The notes beneath the pieces are model-generated. The model was not told the origin of the DNA, ran no database searches, and saw only the letters and a list, made by a program, of their open reading frames with translations. A stretch of DNA of 64,000 nucleotides, taken from the IMG/VR virus record IMGVR_UViG_3300009430_000004, positions 1-64,000 of that record. One strand, written 5' to 3'. A program made the position numbers and the translations under genes. This document shows, piece by piece, positions 2,627-45,778 of this stretch; the stretch's first letter is position 1; every line of letters begins with the position of its first letter.

Positions 2627-4477
2627 TTATACTCTCTTATTAATGTCTATTTCGATAATGCCTCTCTTTGAGAGAGTTCTGTAGGTTACAGCTAAGTAGC
2701 AGTGTAATATGCTTCTTTCTGTTTCCCATGGATTCATATCGAAGTAAACTGATGCAGTTCTAACTTTTGTTCCCTTGTAGTCACTGAACATTCTGTCTGC
2801 TGTTTCTGTGAATCTTTGTCTATCCTCAGGATCAGCGAAGTTGTAAGTCAATGAACCAACAAGTGTTTCAAGCTTTCTCTTCATTTCAAGGAGAACATGC
2901 ATGTTGTTTTCCTCTGAAAGGTCAGACCAGATAAGCTGTGATGTTCCCTGAGTACCTCTTACGTAAGTTCCTTCTGATACACACTCAAAGTAGTTAACTT
3001 TAAGCTCGTACAGTTTTTCCTTAACTTCAACGTCATCAGCGTCAATCATTGGCTTTAAGCTGTTCTTAACCATTCCAGTTAAGCTAGCAACTCTTTCTCC
3101 AACAAATGGTATATGGTTTCCAGACACTCTAAAGTGAACTGGTAACTGTAATGCATAATAGTATGTTGTTGTCATTGGAATATTTTTACCGCTGAATGGA
3201 TCTCTTATCATGTAGTGTTGGCAATCCTTTGAGAATGCTCTGTCGCCAAGTCCAGACATATTTTCAGCCCAAGCAATAGCGTCAGTAGTAGTATTAAGGA
3301 TACCACCGTCGATGAATCCATAAGCGTCATATCTCTTAAGAAGTAAACCTATTAAGGCTCTCTTAACAGTATCTTCATAGTTAGCATCAAGGATTAATTC
3401 AGCAGGAGTTCTTCTCTTACTAAGAATAGCTCTGTCAAATTCTCCATTAAATGCTTTTACATAAGCAGCGTTTATAGCAGTTTCTCTTGCTTCAGGAGTT
3501 GCAGTTCCTACTGCAAAAGATCCGTCAGTACCACCTGACAGAGGAACACCTTCAACTCTATCTAATGAAACAGCACCAGTCTCAGTGTTCTTGAATACTA
3601 TCTTAGGATTTGCTACTCCTAATTTATTCTTTCCAGTGATTGGGTCAAATGTTTCAATAGTAATAGTTGTTGTTGGGTCTACTGTCTTGTACATTTCGAA
3701 TATTTTTCCTAATGCTTCTTGGTTTACATACATTCCAAGCTTTGTGCTACCGCTGTCAACATCATTAACAAGATCTTCTAAGAAAAGAGTCTTGTTTGCT
3801 TCTACAGCATCTGCGAATAATGTTCCTGAGAACAATTCTTTTCTCTTGATTCCACCTTCACTTGTAAGAACTTCTAAGATGTAGTTCTTGTAGGCGTTAT
3901 CTTTGTCTTCTTGTGGAGCAGCACCCATTCTGATTCTAAATACATCACCATAAACTCCTCTTCCTAAGGAGTAAACTCCGAATAGAGGGAAGGTTACATA
4001 TCCGTCAACATCTGGATCTTCTTCTGTCATTAAGTCTGTTAATGCAGCAAACTCATCTTTGCTAAGAAGACCATTGTGGAATAAAGCTTTATGCTTAATA
4101 TTAAGCTTTTTGTTGGCAGCATCAGTTGAATCTACCTTTACTTGTGCAAGAACTACCACGTTGGAATAAGCAGCATCGTCTGGCATAACTCTCATACACC
4201 AGCATTTTGCCTGTCCAGATGATAAAGCCGCATAAGGCATATAACCAGGCTGACCGTAAAGCTTATAATTTGGATTGCCATACTCTTCTGTATAGCCAGT
4301 TGTTGTGTCAAATGGAAGTATAACACCGTCTCGTCCCTTACCAGAAGTAAATACGTTGATAAATCTCAACCCTTCGGCAGGAGCAGAAACAGCTTCCATA
4401 AACTCGGTATTATCATTTATATAGGTCTCCACATGTGGATGCAGATACCCAGGAATTATTTGTCCTGTTCTAGGCAT
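2627..4477 (-). CDS. Tail sheath protein
   Basis: 616 aa. N-terminal HPHVETYIND and LSGGTDG; sheath C-terminal signature (QGTSQLIWSDLSEENNMHVLLEMKR...FNFADPEDRQRF). Late promoter upstream. Confidence 0.85.
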   Translation of the reverse strand: MPRTGQIIPGYLHPHVETYINDNTEFMEAVSAPAEGLRFINVFTSGKGRDGVILPFDTTTGYTEEYGNPNYKLYGQPGYMPYAALSSGQAKCWCMRVMPDDAAYSNVVVLAQVKVDSTDAANKKLNIKHKALFHNGLLSKDEFAALTDLMTEEDPDVDGYVTFPLFGVYSLGRGVYGDVFRIRMGAAPQEDKDNAYKNYILEVLTSEGGIKRKELFSGTLFADAVEANKTLFLEDLVNDVDSGSTKLGMYVNQEALGKIFEMYKTVDPTTTITIETFDPITGKNKLGVANPKIVFKNTETGAVSLDRVEGVPLSGGTDGSFAVGTATPEARETAINAAYVKAFNGEFDRAILSKRRTPAELILDANYEDTVKRALIGLLLKRYDAYGFIDGGILNTTTDAIAWAENMSGLGDRAFSKDCQHYMIRDPFSGKNIPMTTTYYYALQLPVHFRVSGNHIPFVGERVASLTGMVKNSLKPMIDADDVEVKEKLYELKVNYFECVSEGTYVRGTQGTSQLIWSDLSEENNMHVLLEMKRKLETLVGSLTYNFADPEDRQRFTETADRMFSDYKGTKVRTASVYFDMNPWETERSILHCYLAVTYRTLSKRGIIEIDINKRV

Positions 4478-41536: not shown

Positions 41537-41588
41537 ATTTTTAAAAACAATAAAGTAAATAAAAATTGTTGAAAGGATGTGACCTTTT

Positions 41589-41849
41589 ATGCTTGAAGGG
41601 CTTAAGAAAGACATCGCAAGAGAAAAGAATAGCACATTTGTTTTTGAGGCTATGACTGAAAGTATGTCTGATGATGATATCAAAGATGCTTTTCTGGATG
41701 ATGAAGAGGTACTTGTATTGGGGGCTGAAAATGACCCTGAGATAGCCGAGTTGGCTGATGCTATTCCTGAATATGATGAAGATAATCAGGATATAGATGC
41801 TGAATTGGAGAATCTCCAAGAAAATTTCATTCCAGAATCAAAAATTTAA
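41589..41849 (+). CDS. Small acidic late protein
   Basis: Late promoter at 41546-41557, very D/E-rich, VFE|A and MTE|S sites. Confidence 0.55.
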   Translation: MLEGLKKDIAREKNSTFVFEAMTESMSDDDIKDAFLDDEEVLVLGAENDPEIAELADAIPEYDEDNQDIDAELENLQENFIPESKI

Positions 41850-41867: not shown

Positions 41868-42311
41868 ATGAATGCTAAATTAATAAAGATCAAATCAAAT
41901 GGACCAATTTATGCTAAAGGAGGAGTTTACGGACCAATCGAAACTCCTTATGCTGAAGATTTAGGAACAGTCTTCAGAATGTTATCCGCTGGTGTTAAAA
42001 TTGTTGAAGTTTTAGAAGATGGAACTGAAGTGGTTCTTACAGTATCAAACTTCGATAAGAACAACGCACCTAAGAAAGAAGAGAAGGCTCAAGAGCCTGC
42101 AAAGGATCAAACACCTCCTCCTGCTAAACCACCTGCTCAGCAGCAACAGCAACAGCAGCAACAGGTTAAAAATCAGCAGGGGAATCAGAATAATCATGGA
42201 AATAACCACAATCAACAGCAGGGAAAAAATAAAGTTGAAACTACTACAAAAGTAGAAGTTCATACTGAAAAGACTGCTGCACCTGAAGTGGATTCAGTTG
42301 AAACAAAGTAA
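41868..42311 (+). CDS. Protein with small globular N-domain and polyQ/QN-rich tail
   Basis: AQQQQQQQQQVKNQQGNQNNHGNNHNQQQ encoded by mixed CAG/CAA codons. Confidence 0.65.
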   Translation: MNAKLIKIKSNGPIYAKGGVYGPIETPYAEDLGTVFRMLSAGVKIVEVLEDGTEVVLTVSNFDKNNAPKKEEKAQEPAKDQTPPPAKPPAQQQQQQQQQVKNQQGNQNNHGNNHNQQQGKNKVETTTKVEVHTEKTAAPEVDSVETK

Positions 42312-42324
42312 AAAAAAATAAGTT

Positions 42325-42359
42325 CAAGCCTCATAAGTGTTAATCACTTATGAGGCTTG
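42325..42359. terminator. Bidirectional terminator
   Basis: CAAGCCTCATAAGTG-ttaat-CACTTATGAGGCTTG. Confidence 0.9.
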
Positions 42360-43530
42360 TATTTATTTCATACAATAATCATTTGTGGAACTTCTATATA
42401 TTTAATCTACATGTTTTATTTTTTCCCACATTTTATTTATAGGCGTTCTAACAGTGTCGCCTTTATATTTTAGTTTCATAAATTCTCAAAAACCTTATTT
42501 CATCGTAATGATACTTTATTTTTTCTAATCCTTAGTTTAAATTCACATTTAATAGACATCTATATATAACTAATAGATACCTTCATCTAACTTAACTCAC
42601 TTTATAATCTTCAGTAAGTAATTATCTTTGCTCACTTCTGTGAATTAAACCTTCGTAATATTTATGTTTTTACCCATGTTTGTTTTTCACATTGTTTAAT
42701 ATAACAATAGTGCTCTGAAATAATAATTAATAATCTTTCTACAACGAAACTACGAATAATATAAAACAATTAATACTTAACTATTAACAGTTAAACCTTG
42801 TTTAGTAACAACTTTTTGGTGTTTAAAAATTATGTCAATGAACATACGAACGTACGGTATCTAAATAGATTTATTCGTTATCATTGTCATCATCCTCAAC
42901 TCCAATAGTGTCTCCGTCTAATATGATATCATCTCTATCGTCCATAATACTTACTACATACATTCACGTATATAGTAGTCTGCCGATCATAATAAACACT
43001 ATTCTTGTTTACGACTGATTTACATTGTAATAGGTTTAATTATAAACATTCCCACATGTTTTTAATAAAAACTTCTATCGAGGCTCTTGCCTTCTATATT
43101 TTGCGGTTGAGTATATCTCAACTATTTTTTACCCTTTTTTTCAACAAATTTGCGTTTTACGCCCCACGTGACTACGACGACCGCCACGCTTCCAGACACG
43201 ACGTGCAAATATAGAATAGTACATTGCAACATAGAACCTATAATCTACATTACGGAACATAGATTATATTGAACGACCGATTAATACTTCGTATAAACTT
43301 TATGTGGGTGGAAACTACAATATACTACAAGAATATACGTAGCCTACCCTCCTTTCTTTCTAAAATTTGTAGTATTTACCGCTAGTAATGAAAGAAAACA
43401 TATTCGTTTATACATCACCCCCTACACATTTTTTAAACTCCCACAGTCGGTCAAATCTGTGGAATCATGTACAAGGGGATCGCTCACCATCATAAAATGC
43501 CATAAAAATCACCCTCCCTTCAATATATTA

Positions 43531-43540
43531 GTAATATATA
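43531..43540 (-). promoter_or_regulatory. Early promoter TATATATTAC
   Basis: Contains the phiKZ early core TATATTAC, followed by the AAGGGAGGGTGA SD. Confidence 0.65.
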
Positions 43541-43715
43541 AATTAACTAACTACATTAAACAGGGTGGACGTTAACCAGGACATTCCATTTTTATCGCCT
43601 CCTTTGGCTCATTATTAATTGAGGTCGTATGTTCCAACTCCTCAACATTCCTTGATATACCCAATTGGGTTCCAACATCTCGCTCATTACAGTACCAATC
43701 AGGTATATCATAATA

Positions 43716-43725
43716 ATAATATATA
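43716..43725 (-). promoter_or_regulatory. Early promoter TATATATTAT
   Basis: Exact motif, followed by a 15-bp stem-loop. Confidence 0.65.
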
Positions 43726-43756
43726 ATTTAATGGTTTAAAAATACGGAAAAATAAA

Positions 43757-43791
43757 ATATGGTTATATGGAATCAATCCATATAACCATAT
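43757..43791 (-). terminator. Terminator after beta' N gene
   Basis: ATATGGTTATATGGA-atcaa-TCCATATAACCATAT. Confidence 0.88.
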
Positions 43792-43794
43792 CTT

Positions 43795-45381
43795 TTAACT
43801 TGCTTCAAACTTTGTTAGCATATATAAGGTATGAATACCCTCATTTGTTGTTTTTCTCATGTTTTGACCATATATATTAAGTATGTGAGATTTCGCTCTC
43901 ATTATCTTCTCAGCCTCTTGGTTTGCTTGTTGAGAGAATACTGATTTAACAGTAACTTGGTCACCATCATAGTCTCCACCCAATCCAGTTAGGTACAGGT
44001 TTGACATAGTTACAGTGTCAGCGAATGAAACTGATATTTGCTCTTTAGTTGCTTTCAAGTCTACCTTAGGGTAGTTCTTATAAACCCTTCCCCCTACATA
44101 CATTGGAACTGTATCATGTGTACTGAGTACAGTTATTTTGTTAGGGAATGTTCCGAAATAATCGAGCAGAGGATAACGTGTAACGTATACCATTTTATCA
44201 GATGTCACTTCTACTGCCGCCTGATATAATATATCACACCATGTTGCAGCTCTTTGAACTAATGGAGATTCCGTTTCAGGTGCTCCAGGTCTATATTCTT
44301 TACCAATAAAGCTTAGATTTATTTTACCCTCATATTCAGGATCTTCAACAGGAAGCTTGATTTTCTCAAATCTATCAGAATAACTGTAGATGAATCTATC
44401 AACTTGCTTCTTGATATAATCCTCATTAAAGTATAGTCCTGGGTCTTTAAGTTTAACGTACTTAATTTCCCCTTCTTTTGTTCTAATAGGGTATTTATTA
44501 CCCGTTTTTTCTAACTCACGCTGGAAAAATCTCTTAACCCATGAAATAATGAATGGGGTAAACAATGAGCAGCATTGAGCTAATGGAATTCCACAATGGT
44601 AGAAGTCAATATCCATTTCTTCAGGTCTATTAGATTTGAATACTGGTGCTGATATAACAGAACGAGCACCATAGTCAACAGATTTACCCAATAGGGATTT
44701 TCTTATAAGACCTTGTTTCTTTTCAATTTTACCTTTCAACTCATCATATATTTCCACTAATGTCTCTTGGATTTTTGCTCTTGTTGTATTAAGAACGAAA
44801 TCAAAGTTGTTATCGTTCCTTAGAATCGAAGCTAATCTTATCAACTTCGAGTATTTATCATTTATAACATGGTGAGATAATATTCCTTTAGATGCGTTTT
44901 GTAAATTAACGTCTCTATAGAATGCAGGTATTACAATCCATTGTTGACAAAAGATTGTATCCTTATCAAATGCGTCGAGAACGTCTATTCTTTCACTACG
45001 AATCATACTGTTATTCCTCATAAAATTTAGCTTATCCCAATTCTTATATAGGAATTCAAGACCAGTATCACCGTTTTCTTCATCTTCGATTAATTGTCCC
45101 TCTTTGTTAATTACAAATTTTTTCGAGCCATACACTATACTTTCAAAATTACGATTCATTCTCTTTAAAAGCTTGTATACAAATGGTGTTATAAAATGAC
45201 CGTTTAAGCCCATATAAGCGTATGTTTCTCGTCTCTCGTTTACAGACACTCCAAAGATATCCGTTGATAAAAGACCATTAGAGGTAGGAATGTTACCCTT
45301 CTCGAAAATTATTGACTCAGTAACTTCCTTAAGCTTATTTTCCTCTATAAACTTTTTAACAGGAATTAAATCTATCTTCAT
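43795..45381 (-). CDS. Multisubunit RNA polymerase beta' N-terminal half (catalytic), probably virion RNAP
   Basis: GLLSTDIFG, GLIRKSLLGKSVDYGARSVI, VTRYP, and catalytic GGDYDGD. Last gene of a late baseplate operon. Confidence 0.9.
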   Translation of the reverse strand: MKIDLIPVKKFIEENKLKEVTESIIFEKGNIPTSNGLLSTDIFGVSVNERRETYAYMGLNGHFITPFVYKLLKRMNRNFESIVYGSKKFVINKEGQLIEDEENGDTGLEFLYKNWDKLNFMRNNSMIRSERIDVLDAFDKDTIFCQQWIVIPAFYRDVNLQNASKGILSHHVINDKYSKLIRLASILRNDNNFDFVLNTTRAKIQETLVEIYDELKGKIEKKQGLIRKSLLGKSVDYGARSVISAPVFKSNRPEEMDIDFYHCGIPLAQCCSLFTPFIISWVKRFFQRELEKTGNKYPIRTKEGEIKYVKLKDPGLYFNEDYIKKQVDRFIYSYSDRFEKIKLPVEDPEYEGKINLSFIGKEYRPGAPETESPLVQRAATWCDILYQAAVEVTSDKMVYVTRYPLLDYFGTFPNKITVLSTHDTVPMYVGGRVYKNYPKVDLKATKEQISVSFADTVTMSNLYLTGLGGDYDGDQVTVKSVFSQQANQEAEKIMRAKSHILNIYGQNMRKTTNEGIHTLYMLTKFEAS

Positions 45382-45778
45382 AAATGTCCTCCTCTCTACA
45401 GATTTTTTTATTCTCTATAGAGATGTTCAGTTTATTGCTTTCCTTTTCAATTTTGACAGAAAAGTATTTGGAATAGTAGACACTATTTTTATTTTTTGTA
45501 TATTTATCCATAACCTTTCTAAAACTGTCTCTATCCTTATTGTCATCAAATTTTATTATGACAATTAACTGCTTTGTATTCTCAGTGCATTCAATTTTCT
45601 GCACGTCGCCCAAGCATATATCTTCAATAATCAAATAGAAATATTTAAATTTTTCATAATGTAAATTCAGTATATCCTCAAATAAATCACAATCAGCTAA
45701 CTCATTTTCGGTTAGCTGATTGAAAACTGAAATCATATCATTCAACCTCAAAACCCCCTTTTCTACATTTTTTAGCAA
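45356..45778 (-). CDS. Hypothetical protein
   Basis: Operonic; probable start is ATG 45736. Confidence 0.5.
   Translation of the reverse strand: MLKNVEKGVLRLNDMISVFNQLTENELADCDLFEDILNLHYEKFKYFYLIIEDICLGDVQKIECTENTKQLIVIIKFDDNKDRDSFRKVMDKYTKNKNSVYYSKYFSVKIEKESNKLNISIENKKICREEDIYEDRFNSC

What the first reader, a model, noticed from the sequence alone, without database searches (positions are those of the whole stretch)
42360..43756. 1.4-kb terminator-bounded early transcription unit with no real protein genes
Seen: the interval is enclosed by two perfect terminators (42325-42359, 43757-43791) and has two early promoters firing on the minus strand (43716-43725, 43531-43540). It has the G-rich sense-strand skew of transcribed DNA, yet the longest minus-strand ORFs I found are 39 aa (43141-43260, Arg-rich MFRNVDYRFY..RRVWKRGGRRSHVGRK) and 30 aa (42871-42963, acidic MYVVSIMDDRDDIILDGDTIGVEDDDNDNE). 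This is the only large non-coding stretch in an otherwise densely coded genome. A locally GC-rich core at 43150-43205 forms stems (GCGUGGC/GUCACGU, GCGU-AAA-ACGC), flanked by GUUGAG/CUCAAC and UGCAA/UUGCA. Inference: a long structured early ncRNA, a mini-peptide array, or a graveyard of decayed early genes. The 42400-42680 part reads as protein-like fragments broken by stops.
Basis: partly seen in the sequence, partly recalled or inferred. Interest (0 to 1): 0.72.

Follow-up and report, generated by a model that had tools for sequence, protein, structure and literature searches.

The report
Hidden micropeptide gene with split ribosome site
The 1.4-kb "gene-free" stretch of this jumbo phage is most likely an early mRNA for a conserved 24-residue acidic peptide, whose ribosome-binding sequence lies about 400 bases upstream of the start codon and appears to be brought next to it by a long RNA helix.

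Summary
Window 42312-43794 is the longest ORF-free stretch of the whole 218-kb genome. It lies between two convergent terminators and starts with an AR9-type early promoter (TSS about 43709, minus strand).

It is not free of genes. The dismissed 30-aa ORF contains a 24-codon micro-gene (42945-42871). This gene is conserved at the same place in 17 other lineages, varies mostly at third codon positions, and carries the motif [DE]G[DE][TI]IG.

In 7 lineages a normal GGAGG (GGGGG in L066) sits 6-10 nt before its ATG. In 11 lineages, this phage included, no such site is there. Instead, a strong SD (AGAAAGGAGG, 43357-43348) lies 114-409 nt upstream. The 30 nt after that SD pair with the 30 nt before the ATG (24-33 bp, -25 to -34 kcal/mol). 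Across the helix, SD and ATG are 6-12 nt apart.

This is a split ribosome-binding site of the T4 gene 38/25 kind, with a loop about ten times longer. A competing three-way junction with covariation, and an array of 3-4 SD-like sites, precede it.

The rest of the region is not conserved and has no Rfam match, no unusual folding and no relic of a protein gene. Everything here is computed; no RNA data exist.

The parts
43754..43794 (-). Intrinsic terminator of the beta' (virion RNA polymerase) gene; it insulates the unit from upstream late transcription.
   Evidence: 18-bp stem followed by a T-run. Fold z = -4.4.
43709..43746 (-). Early promoter P1: CGTA box at 43746-43743, core TATATATTAT at 43725-43716, N6, predicted start G at 43709.
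   Evidence: The core motif occurs 14 times in the window against 4.5 expected. Genome-wide it mostly precedes an SD plus ATG. It matches the AR9 early consensus in PMC5312081. The same terminator-CGTA-core cassette sits about 45-90 nt after the beta' stop in most relatives.
43572..43605 (-). First SD-like site (AAAGGAGG) followed by a 5-codon mini-ORF (MECPG).
   Evidence: Sequence read directly. Arrays of 3-4 such sites, 50-125 nt apart, recur in the long-gap relatives.
43531..43540 (-). Second promoter-like site, P2 (TATATATTAC); a weaker candidate.
   Evidence: It deviates at the last core base and at +1, and has no CGTA box. The AR9 virion polymerase is reported to be sensitive to single deviations.
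43465..43518 (-). Second SD-like site (GGGAGGGTGA) followed by a 12-codon mini-ORF.
   Evidence: Not conserved as a peptide.
43283..43420 (-). Three-way-junction module. It holds a third SD-like site (GGGGGTGA, 43422-43415), helix P0 (43413-43406 with 43298-43291), helix P1 (pyrimidine tract 43398-43390 with purine tract 43360-43353) and local hairpin A.
   Evidence: The MFE folds have the same architecture in 8 lineages. The covariance model finds it only at this slot: L025, L026, L032, L038, L039, L002. 91.8% of cells are paired, 17 of 22 pairs change on both sides, and 0 of 500 shuffles reach this.
43348..43357 (-). Distal Shine-Dalgarno AGAAAGGAGG (core GGAGG at 43352-43348), 402 nt upstream of the micro-ORF start.
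   Evidence: It is the only one of the four genome sites with 10 nt of anti-SD complementarity that has no ORF behind it. The homologous site in relatives reaches 12-13 nt of complementarity.
43310..43343 (-). Strand A of the long-range helix. It starts 4 nt after the distal SD and can alternatively form local hairpin A.
42985..43309 (-). Looped-out domain of about 325 nt, specific to this lineage.
   Evidence: Not conserved. Ordinary fold z-scores. The equivalent domain in relatives is about 50-340 nt (SD-to-ATG distance 114-409 nt).
42953..42984 (-). Strand B of the long-range helix. It ends 7 nt before the micro-ORF ATG.
   Evidence: An unbiased scan of the whole upstream gap picks strand A as its best partner at -32.1 kcal/mol and 28 bp. 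Shuffled sequences give -11 +/- 3. Only 0.7% of random genome sites reach -32.
42871..42945 (-). Micro-gene of 24 codons plus stop (MDDRDDIILDGDTIGVEDDDNDNE): 12 acidic residues and 1 basic.
   Evidence: An ORF is conserved at the same place in 17 other lineages, 14-29 aa long, with the core [DE]G[DE][TI]IG. Variation over the six core codons is 3, 4 and 15 at codon positions 1, 2 and 3. A canonical SD precedes it in 7 lineages.
42360..42870 (-). Long AT-rich 3' untranslated stretch of about 510 nt. No feature was found in it.
   Evidence: No ORF, no similarity, and fold z between -1.7 and +1.6. In relatives this part is 53-265 nt, terminator included.
42325..42359 (.). Bidirectional terminator shared with the convergent plus-strand gene (41868-42311).
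   Evidence: 15-bp stem, with T-runs on both strands. Fold z about -6.

Best explanation
Proposed mechanism:
1. The region is one early transcription unit on the minus strand. The injected virion RNA polymerase starts at P1 (about 43709) and stops at the shared terminator (42359-42325), giving an RNA of about 1.35 kb.
2. Its one conserved product is a 24-residue, very acidic micropeptide (42945-42874).
3. The start codon has no Shine-Dalgarno next to it.
4. The functional SD is the strong purine tract AGAAAGGAGG, 402 nt upstream. The about 30 nt that follow it (strand A) pair with the about 30 nt that precede the ATG (strand B).
5. This loops out a non-conserved domain of about 325 nt and leaves 4 + 7 unpaired bases between GGAGG and AUG, a normal SD-to-start distance.
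6. Strand A can also fold locally, inside a conserved three-way junction that partly masks the SD. The RNA probably has two states, with the ribosome site assembled only in the long-range one.
7. The leader's other SD-like sites and its mini-ORFs may load ribosomes or protect the RNA. The remaining sequence is lineage-specific spacer.

Shown by computation: the anatomy, conservation, covariation, energies and spacing. Inferred: transcription, translation, the switch, and what the peptide does.
For: The micro-gene:
- It is present in 18 lineages in all.
- Variation over the six core codons is 3, 4 and 15 at codon positions 1, 2 and 3.
- Its core is the only nucleotide block besides the terminator-promoter cassette and the SD-junction module core that is conserved between otherwise unalignable gaps.

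The two kinds of ribosome site:
- 7 of 7 lineages with a GGAGG-type site 6-10 nt before the ATG (GGGGG in L066) have no strong upstream partner for the pre-ATG sequence (-13 to -23 kcal/mol).
- 11 of 11 lineages without a proximal SD have a helix of 24-33 bp at -24.7 to -34.0 kcal/mol. Its 5' strand starts 2-6 nt after a distal SD, and its 3' strand ends 4-7 nt before the ATG, so x+y is 6-12.
- L065 was fetched after the rule was formulated and obeyed it.

Controls for the helix:
- Shuffled sequences give -8 to -11 kcal/mol, and 0 of 200 reach the observed value.
- For random genome sites the best partner averages -18.5 +/- 3.9, and 0.7% reach -32.
- The duplex beats the sum of the two local hairpins by 7-19 kcal/mol.
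- Each lineage's own A-B pairing is the strongest or near-strongest in 7 of 8 rows of the cross-lineage matrix. The exception is L025's A strand, which pairs slightly better with WIN's B strand (-32.6 against -29.9).
- The sense-strand duplex beats the antisense one in 9 of 11 lineages, by up to 11.7 kcal/mol. This points to RNA-level selection.

Whole-leader folding:
- Folded without the upstream leader, the global MFE contains the helix in L032, L038, L011 and L022.
- With 100 nt of upstream leader included, it is the MFE in L002 and L038 and lies 2-9 kcal/mol above it elsewhere.

The three-way junction: covariation is significant, with 0 of 500 shuffles reaching the observed score and slid controls 4-12 times lower.

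Precedent: split ribosome sites in T4 genes 38 and 25, where a hairpin shortens 22 nt to 5 and 27 nt to 11 (PMC3014915).
Against: - There is no RNA-seq, ribosome profiling or peptide evidence. The phage is known only from groundwater metagenomes.
- In the window itself the long-range state is 7.1 kcal/mol above the predicted MFE and has about zero ensemble probability.
- A ribosome site split by 100-400 nt has no experimental precedent.
- A 25-33 bp duplex at the site could hinder 30S binding or be cut by RNase III.
- Lineages are related and the tree backbone is unresolved, so 11 against 7 is not 18 independent trials.
- The covariation counts for the junction come from an alignment fitted to the model.
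- Host 16S is unknown; the anti-SD sequence was assumed from memory to be Bacillus-like.
Confidence: 0.6

Rival explanations
1. The long helix is a processing or silencing element, not an activator. Either RNase III cuts the 25-33 bp duplex and excises the loop, or the helix simply occludes the start region. The purine tracts would then be STAB-SD-type 5' stabilisers that block 5'-3' decay, as in cryIIIA and phage SP82 early RNA. The micropeptide would be translated poorly, or from a processed RNA.
For: - Helix length and near-perfect pairing fit an RNase III substrate.
- The SD-like tracts have up to 13 nt of anti-SD complementarity and mostly lack conserved ORFs, like STAB-SD elements (PMC4113751 and PMC5737220, listed; SP82 is from my own knowledge).
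- The array holds 3-4 such sites, not one.
Against: - It does not explain why strand A always begins 2-6 nt after the strongest SD and strand B always ends 4-7 nt before the ATG, with a summed spacing typical of a ribosome site.
- It does not explain why a proximal SD is missing exactly where the helix exists.
Confidence: 0.2
2. The leader acts as an RNA in its own right. It would be an early decoy that ties up 30S subunits, or an array of minigenes like lambda bar that provokes peptidyl-tRNA drop-off, helping to shut off host translation. The micro-ORF would be a secondary passenger.
For: - 3-4 strong SD-like sites spaced 50-125 nt apart occur in every long-gap lineage.
- Several are followed by ORFs of 3-12 codons, for example MECPG here and two 7-8 codon ORFs in L025.
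- The unit has an early promoter and is insulated by terminators.
Against: - The mini-ORF peptides and their positions are not conserved.
- Seven lineages have no array at all yet keep the micro-ORF.
- The most conserved SD is tied structurally to the micro-ORF start.
- One RNA species is unlikely to titrate ribosomes.
Confidence: 0.1
3. The region is a graveyard of decayed accessory early genes. The slot once held ordinary small genes, as it still does in some relatives. Only the micro-ORF is functional, and the helix arms are leftovers such as the inverted ends of an insertion.
For: - The same slot holds five intact genes in L029, a 107-110 aa gene in L015 and L022, and two genes in L067, one with a ClpX zinc finger.
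- Gap length varies from 256 to about 2,600 bp.
- The 5' leader, the loop and the 510-nt tail of the window are unconserved.
Against: - There is no residual protein similarity in any frame.
- Stop codons are at fully random density, while the promoter, SD, helix and junction are intact and covary.
- The sense-strand bias of the helix argues for selection on the RNA.
- No second copy of any putative insertion exists in the genome.
Confidence: 0.1
4. It is a DNA-level element: an invertible segment flanked by inverted repeats, a replication origin or a packaging site.
For: - 25-33 bp inverted repeats flank a 70-370 bp segment.
- The region is AT-rich and ORF-free.
- The cumulative GC skew turns here.
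Against: - The skew turn coincides with the switch in gene strand.
- No iterons or tandem repeats are present.
- G-U pairs make the sense RNA duplex far stronger than the antisense one.
- Assembled contigs show one orientation only (weak evidence).
Confidence: 0.03

Closest known systems
Split (discontinuous) ribosome-binding sites of phage T4 genes 38 and 25 (Nivinskas, Malys; reviewed in PMC3014915)
   Same: The SD and the start codon lie too far apart in the linear sequence. An intervening RNA structure brings them to a working distance. The arrangement is found in some relatives and is absent in others that have a normal site.
   Different: - T4 loops out 10-20 nt with a small hairpin (22 nt to 5, 27 nt to 11). 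Here 114-409 nt are looped out by a 24-33 bp long-range helix.
- Here the 5' strand also takes part in a competing three-way junction.
- The gene served encodes a 14-29 aa peptide.
- Nothing here has been tested experimentally.
STAB-SD and polypurine 5' mRNA stabilisers of Gram-positive bacteria (cryIIIA; hbs; phage SP82 early RNA)
   Same: They are extended purine tracts complementary to the 16S 3' end. No start codon follows at the proper distance, and they sit in leaders of AT-rich Firmicute-type transcripts.
   Different: - Here they form an array of 3-4 sites.
- The strongest site is embedded in conserved helices and is geometrically coupled to a distant start codon.
- A stabilising function was not tested.
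Long-range fold-back control of translation (hok mRNA fbi/tac elements; IS10 transposase; MS2 long-distance interactions), from my own knowledge
   Same: Mutually exclusive local and long-range pairings in one mRNA decide whether a small ORF can be initiated.
   Different: In those systems the long-range pairing represses translation by sequestering the site. Here it is proposed to build the site.
AR9/PBS1 early transcription units (PMC5312081)
   Same: The early promoter core is the same (TATATATTAT-N6-G). The flanking gene is the virion RNA polymerase beta' N-terminal subunit, the homologue of AR9 g145.
   Different: - AR9 has only about 235 bp here, no micro-ORF and no module.
- AR9 5' UTRs are reported up to 491 nt; here the start codon lies about 765 nt from the predicted transcript start.

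Membership tests
Split ribosome-binding site (T4 gene 38/25 type) | The SD and the start codon are separated by a non-functional linear distance, with no proximal SD. | tested here: met
   402 nt in the window and 114-409 nt across 11 lineages. No match of 5 nt or more to the anti-SD complement lies within 20 nt of the ATG.
Split ribosome-binding site (T4 gene 38/25 type) | The intervening sequence forms a stable structure that restores a functional SD-to-start spacing. | tested here: met
   Computed only. Helices of 24-33 bp at -24.7 to -34 kcal/mol; x+y = 6-12 nt, against 6-10 nt in the canonical lineages. The long-range state is the MFE in 2 of 8 lineages tested in full context.
Split ribosome-binding site (T4 gene 38/25 type) | Disrupting the structure lowers translation, and compensatory changes restore it. 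| not testable with these tools
   Natural covariation stands in for this: lineage-specific helices and pair-preserving changes between close relatives.
STAB-SD 5' stabiliser | An SD-like tract with extended 16S complementarity that does not serve an adjacent ORF. | tested here: met
   AGAAAGGAGG in the window and up to AGAAAGGAGGTGA in relatives, with no conserved ORF behind it. The 16S tail was assumed, not known.
STAB-SD 5' stabiliser | It confers stability on the downstream RNA through 30S binding. | not testable with these tools
   No RNA data.
Known structured RNA families (Rfam 15: ROOL, GOLLD, OLE, tmRNA, RNase P, riboswitches, T-box, group I/II introns) | A covariance-model match at or near the gathering score. 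| tested here: not met
   In the window the best hits have E >= 0.22 and fall on the terminator hairpins. In 8 relatives' loci the only hits are group I introns inside the beta' gene of L012.
AR9-type early (virion RNA polymerase) promoter | Consensus AAATATATATTAT-N6-G(+1). | tested here: met
   P1 has one mismatch and G at +1. P2 has a C at the last core base and A at +1. Activity was not tested.
Pseudogene remnants of early genes | Residual similarity to intact homologues, or retained codon structure. | tested here: not met
   tblastx against the genome itself and about 60 relatives' loci, plus Pfam and PHROGs, found nothing beyond the micro-ORF. Stop density is random.
Protein-coding micro-gene | The ORF is maintained across lineages, substitutions concentrate at synonymous positions, and it has a ribosome-binding site. 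| tested here: met
   18 lineages in all. Codon-position variability is 3, 4 and 15. A canonical SD is present in 7 lineages. The peptide was not detected experimentally.
RNA switch (two conserved, mutually exclusive folds) | Both conformers are supported by covariation, and a trigger is known. | tested here: inconclusive
   Both folds covary and lie within 0-9 kcal/mol of each other. No trigger was identified.

The most novel reading that the evidence does not exclude
The leader is a bistable RNA device. During transcription the SD is first locked into a three-way junction. Only when strand B has been made, 100-400 nt later, and the RNA refolds is a ribosome site assembled across a 25-33 bp helix. 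The refolding may be helped by 30S subunits landing on the upstream SD array. This would time or dose an acidic host-takeover micropeptide in a large, uncultured clade of jumbo phages that inject their own RNA polymerase. It would be the longest split ribosome-binding site known and a new class of translational riboregulator.
Probability: 0.3. Interest if true: 0.8.

Novelty: new variant of a known kind. Interest (0 to 1): 0.62.

Why it matters
- If right, the distance over which RNA folding can assemble a bacterial ribosome-binding site grows about tenfold, from about 20 nt in T4 to 100-400 nt. The natural on/off comparison (11 split against 7 canonical lineages) makes this directly testable with reporters.
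- It uncovers a conserved early micropeptide family that gene callers miss. The peptide is encoded in at least 18 lineages of an environmental jumbo-phage clade related to AR9/PBS1, and is a candidate host-takeover factor.
- The largest "non-coding" gap of a dense phage genome can be the oversized control region of a 75-nt gene.

Tried and rejected
- **Rfam** on the window (E up to 10) and on 8 relatives found nothing relevant. No tRNA or tmRNA is present in the window.
- **DNA similarity** to 50,697 phage records: none. An exact 38-mer from the GC-rich core is absent from IMG/VR.
- **Sliding-window folding** on both strands shows only the terminators standing out.
- **Repeats and iterons**: only the two promoter copies are repeated.
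- **Paralogues or multicopy insertions** in the genome: none.
- **RNAalifold** on a plain MAFFT alignment of the module gave no structure, because the alignment was not structure-aware. It was replaced by a covariance model.
- **Sequencing runs**: only two groundwater DNA runs hold the sequence, and no RNA run does. Laying contigs added no variants.
- **Late-promoter motif** (AAAACA-N6-TAA, derived) is absent from the region on both strands.
- **Micro-ORF in distant relatives**: a search of AR9, BpSp and the 37-63% identity clades found none.
- **Pfam and PHROGs** on the micropeptides and on every longer stop-free fragment gave nothing at or below E = 0.05.
- **Thermonuclease or Excalibur resemblance** of the peptide motif was recalled from memory and dropped, because length and spacing do not fit.
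- **No complex or structure prediction** was run, because no partner is known and the peptide is too short.
Full report
**Context**

The window is the first 64 kb of a 218,088-bp, 33% GC phage contig from a groundwater metagenome. The gene at 43795-45381 (minus strand) is the N-terminal beta' subunit of a multisubunit RNA polymerase. It is 38-41% identical to that of Bacillus phages BpSp, AR9 and PBS1, where it is the virion enzyme subunit g145. The phage is therefore a distant, uncultured relative of the AR9 group. A protein search found 762 beta' homologues at E <= 1e-50, down to 81% identity for the nearest relative. The clade is large.

**Checking the observation**

The interval 42312-43794 lies between two convergent genes, each ended by a strong hairpin and T-run terminator. 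One is at 42325-42359 and works on both strands. The other is at 43754-43794 on the minus strand.

It is the longest stretch without an ORF of 80 aa or more in the whole genome. Stop codons occur at the density expected for random 30% GC sequence in all three minus-strand frames.

The plus-strand GC skew is -0.19 to -0.40, like minus-strand coding DNA next door.

The motif TATATATTA is over-represented: 14 copies in the window against 4.5 expected. Genome-wide it usually precedes an SD and a start codon. It matches the experimentally defined AR9 early promoter AAATATATATTAT-N6-G (PMC5312081).
- The copy at 43725-43716 fits with one mismatch and has G at the predicted start, 43709.
- The copy at 43540-43531 deviates twice and is doubtful.

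The region is present at 99.9% identity in a separately catalogued IMG/VR contig, and as fragments in a second groundwater sample. It is not an assembly artefact.

The "protein-like fragments" have no detectable homologue.

**Comparative anatomy of the slot**

I fetched the orthologous locus from IMG/VR, a metagenome collection and public assemblies. Synteny is kept across relatives with 66-81% beta' identity: the beta' gene, then a gap, then the convergent homologue of the 147-aa gene.

The gap ranges from 256 bp to about 2.6 kb.
- Most gaps begin with the same cassette: terminator, a CGTA box, and the TATATATTAT core 45-90 nt after the beta' stop. Some short-gap lineages have a degenerate core or none.
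- Some lineages carry ordinary genes behind this promoter: five in L029, a 107-110 aa gene in L015 and L022, and two in L067.
- Others, like the window, carry 0.5-1.5 kb without called genes (L025: 1,077 bp; L026: 1,137 bp).
- AR9 itself has only about 235 bp here and none of the features below.

**A conserved micro-gene**

Only a few short blocks of the window's gap align with any relative: the terminator-promoter cassette, the core of the SD-junction module described below, and a block inside the 30-aa acidic ORF.

In 17 other lineages an ORF of 14-29 codons sits at this place, just before the shared terminator. Its core is [DE]-G-[DE]-[TI]-I-[GC], usually after two hydrophobic residues and usually followed by an acidic tail.

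Across 13 distinct sequences, the six core codons vary 3, 4 and 15 times at codon positions 1, 2 and 3. This is the signature of selection on a protein.

In the window the gene most likely starts at the second ATG (42945), judged by alignment with the relatives. It encodes 24 residues, 12 of them acidic. Pfam and PHROGs do not know the peptide, and its function is unknown.

**The split ribosome-binding site**

Seven lineages have a standard GGAGG-type site 6-10 nt before the micro-ORF ATG (GGGGG in L066): L027, L028, L029, L031, L040/L053, L066 and L067. Eleven have nothing resembling an SD there: the window, L025, L026, L002, L012, L032, L038, L011, L015, L022 and L065.

In those eleven, I scanned the whole upstream gap for the best duplex partner of the 40 nt before the ATG. 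The scan always picked the segment that begins 2-6 nt after a strong upstream SD-like tract. That tract is AGAAAGGAGG in the window and up to AGAAAGGAGGTGA elsewhere.

| Property of the helix | Value |
|---|---|
| Length | 24-33 bp |
| Stability | -24.7 to -34.0 kcal/mol |
| Shuffled controls | -8 to -11 kcal/mol; 0 of 200 reach the observed value |
| Best partners of random genome sites | mean -18.5, sd 3.9; 0.7% reach -32 |
| Advantage over the two local hairpins combined | 7-19 kcal/mol |
| Canonical lineages, best partner | -13 to -23 kcal/mol |

The helix sequences differ between lineages. In a cross-lineage matrix each lineage's own A-B pair is the strongest or near-strongest in 7 of 8 rows. 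The exception is L025's A strand, which pairs slightly better with the window's B strand (-32.6 against -29.9). Changes between close relatives preserve pairing.

The duplex is stronger on the sense RNA than on the antisense strand in 9 of 11 lineages, by up to 11.7 kcal/mol. The selection therefore acts on RNA, not on a DNA inverted repeat.

The linear SD-to-ATG distance is 114-409 nt, and 402 nt in the window. Across the helix, 6-12 unpaired bases remain. In the window these are 4 after GGAGG and 7 before AUG. This equals the spacing in the canonical lineages.

L065 was retrieved after the rule had been formulated, and it conformed.

A tree of the beta' N-terminus interleaves split and canonical lineages on a poorly resolved backbone. 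This would fit repeated gain or loss, but the tree does not settle it. Deleting helix plus loop would regenerate a canonical site in one step.

The closest precedent is the split site of T4 genes 38 and 25, where a small hairpin reduces 22 nt to 5 and 27 nt to 11 (PMC3014915).

**A competing fold and an SD array**

Strand A can also form a local hairpin inside a three-way junction.
- Closing helix P0 is GUAUAAAC with GUUUAUAC in the window, and GCAUAAAC with GUUUAUGC in L025 and L026.
- In hairpin P1 a pyrimidine tract pairs with the purines just 5' of the SD. Its sequence covaries: UUUCUUC/GAAGAAA, UUUCUUUC/GAAAGAAA and CUUUCUCU/AGAGAAAG.

A covariance model built from three lineages finds the module only at this slot in other lineages. 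On the resulting alignment:
- 91.8% of cells pair, against 71% in shuffles;
- 17 of 22 pairs change on both sides;
- no shuffle or slid control comes close.

That alignment is fitted to the model and includes two spurious rows.

With the upstream leader included, the long-range state is the MFE in L002 and L038. It lies 2-9 kcal/mol above the junction state elsewhere, and 7.1 above it in the window. Two alternative states are plausible, but their balance cannot be settled by computation.

Upstream, the long-gap lineages examined in detail carry 2-4 strong SD-like sites spaced 50-125 nt apart. Some are followed by ORFs of 3-12 codons that are not conserved as peptides. They may be ribosome landing sites, stabilisers of the STAB-SD kind, or minigenes. 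I could not discriminate between these.

**What the rest is**

Three parts share nothing with any relative, the genome itself, Rfam, Pfam or PHROGs, and they fold like shuffled sequence:
- the about 290 nt between the transcript start and the module;
- the about 510-nt tail.

The phage's late-promoter motif (AAAACA-N6-TAA) is absent from the region. I read these parts as lineage-specific spacer in a slot that gains and loses accessory DNA. A past coding role cannot be excluded, but it has left no trace.

**Verdict**

But it is not a gene-free ncRNA locus. It is best explained as an early mRNA for a conserved micropeptide whose ribosome-binding site is split by hundreds of nucleotides and reassembled by RNA folding.

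Confidence by claim:
- About 0.8 that the micro-gene is real.
- About 0.6 for the whole explanation, including the split-site mechanism.
- Lower for the switch.

All claims about transcription, translation and function are inferences that need the experiments listed.

Noticed in passing
window 43743-43746 with 43716-43725; also genome positions such as 90639, 131849, 184348, 187257, 194666 and 212601; relatives L002, L012, L015, L025, L038: A subset of the early promoters is bipartite. A conserved (T)CGTA box lies about 17-20 nt upstream of the TATATATTAT core (23-26 nt start to start), often directly after a terminator T-run. The published AR9 consensus quoted does not include such a box.
   Followed up: partly
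L011, L012/L017, L015, L016, L022 (beta' gene); Rfam hits at L012:1692-1961 and 3805-4021: Relatives carry insertions in the virion RNA polymerase beta' gene after residues 242 and about 470-474; in L012 both are Rfam group I introns. AR9 has two with homing endonucleases. The window's gene is uninterrupted.
   Followed up: partly
window 43080-43093 and 43105-43123, plus strand: Two terminator-like hairpins with T-runs lie on the strand antisense to the early RNA, inside the looped-out domain. They could stop plus-strand read-through from the late genes before it reaches the leader module.
   Followed up: no
whole genome; window 41545-41558 (+), upstream of the 86-aa ORF at 41589: Upstream regions of genes without the early motif give the consensus AAAACA-N6-TAA. 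This is the same type as the AR9 late promoter AACA-N6-TA/G and suggests a conserved non-virion polymerase specificity.
   Followed up: partly
L029:5594-7916; L067:5174-5955; L015:10114-10446; L027:7647-7937: The slot between the beta' gene and the micro-ORF is a hotspot for accessory genes in relatives: five genes of 58-207 aa, a ClpX-type zinc-finger protein, a 107-110 aa protein, and a 96-aa gene on the opposite strand. None has a known family apart from the ClpX zinc-finger hit (PF06689).
   Followed up: partly
genome C1:90206-90747, 121498-122026, 187153-187783, 217031-218088 (outside the window): These are the other ORF-poor gaps of the genome. Two of them hold pairs of divergent early promoters. 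The last one is at the contig end.
   Followed up: no
window 41868-42311 (+): The convergent 147-aa neighbour has a conserved N-terminal half and a glutamine-rich, low-complexity C-terminal half. It has no match in the phage record collection. One contig differs by 1 nt in the A-run at 42310, next to its stop codon.
   Followed up: no
window 45339-45443 (-); L025:5941-6037; L026:5938-6037: The covariance model gives weak hits (E 0.2-4) at the start region of the beta' gene in three lineages. A pyrimidine/purine hairpin precedes AGAGAGGAGG there. A similar SD-masking hairpin may exist at that gene.
   Followed up: no
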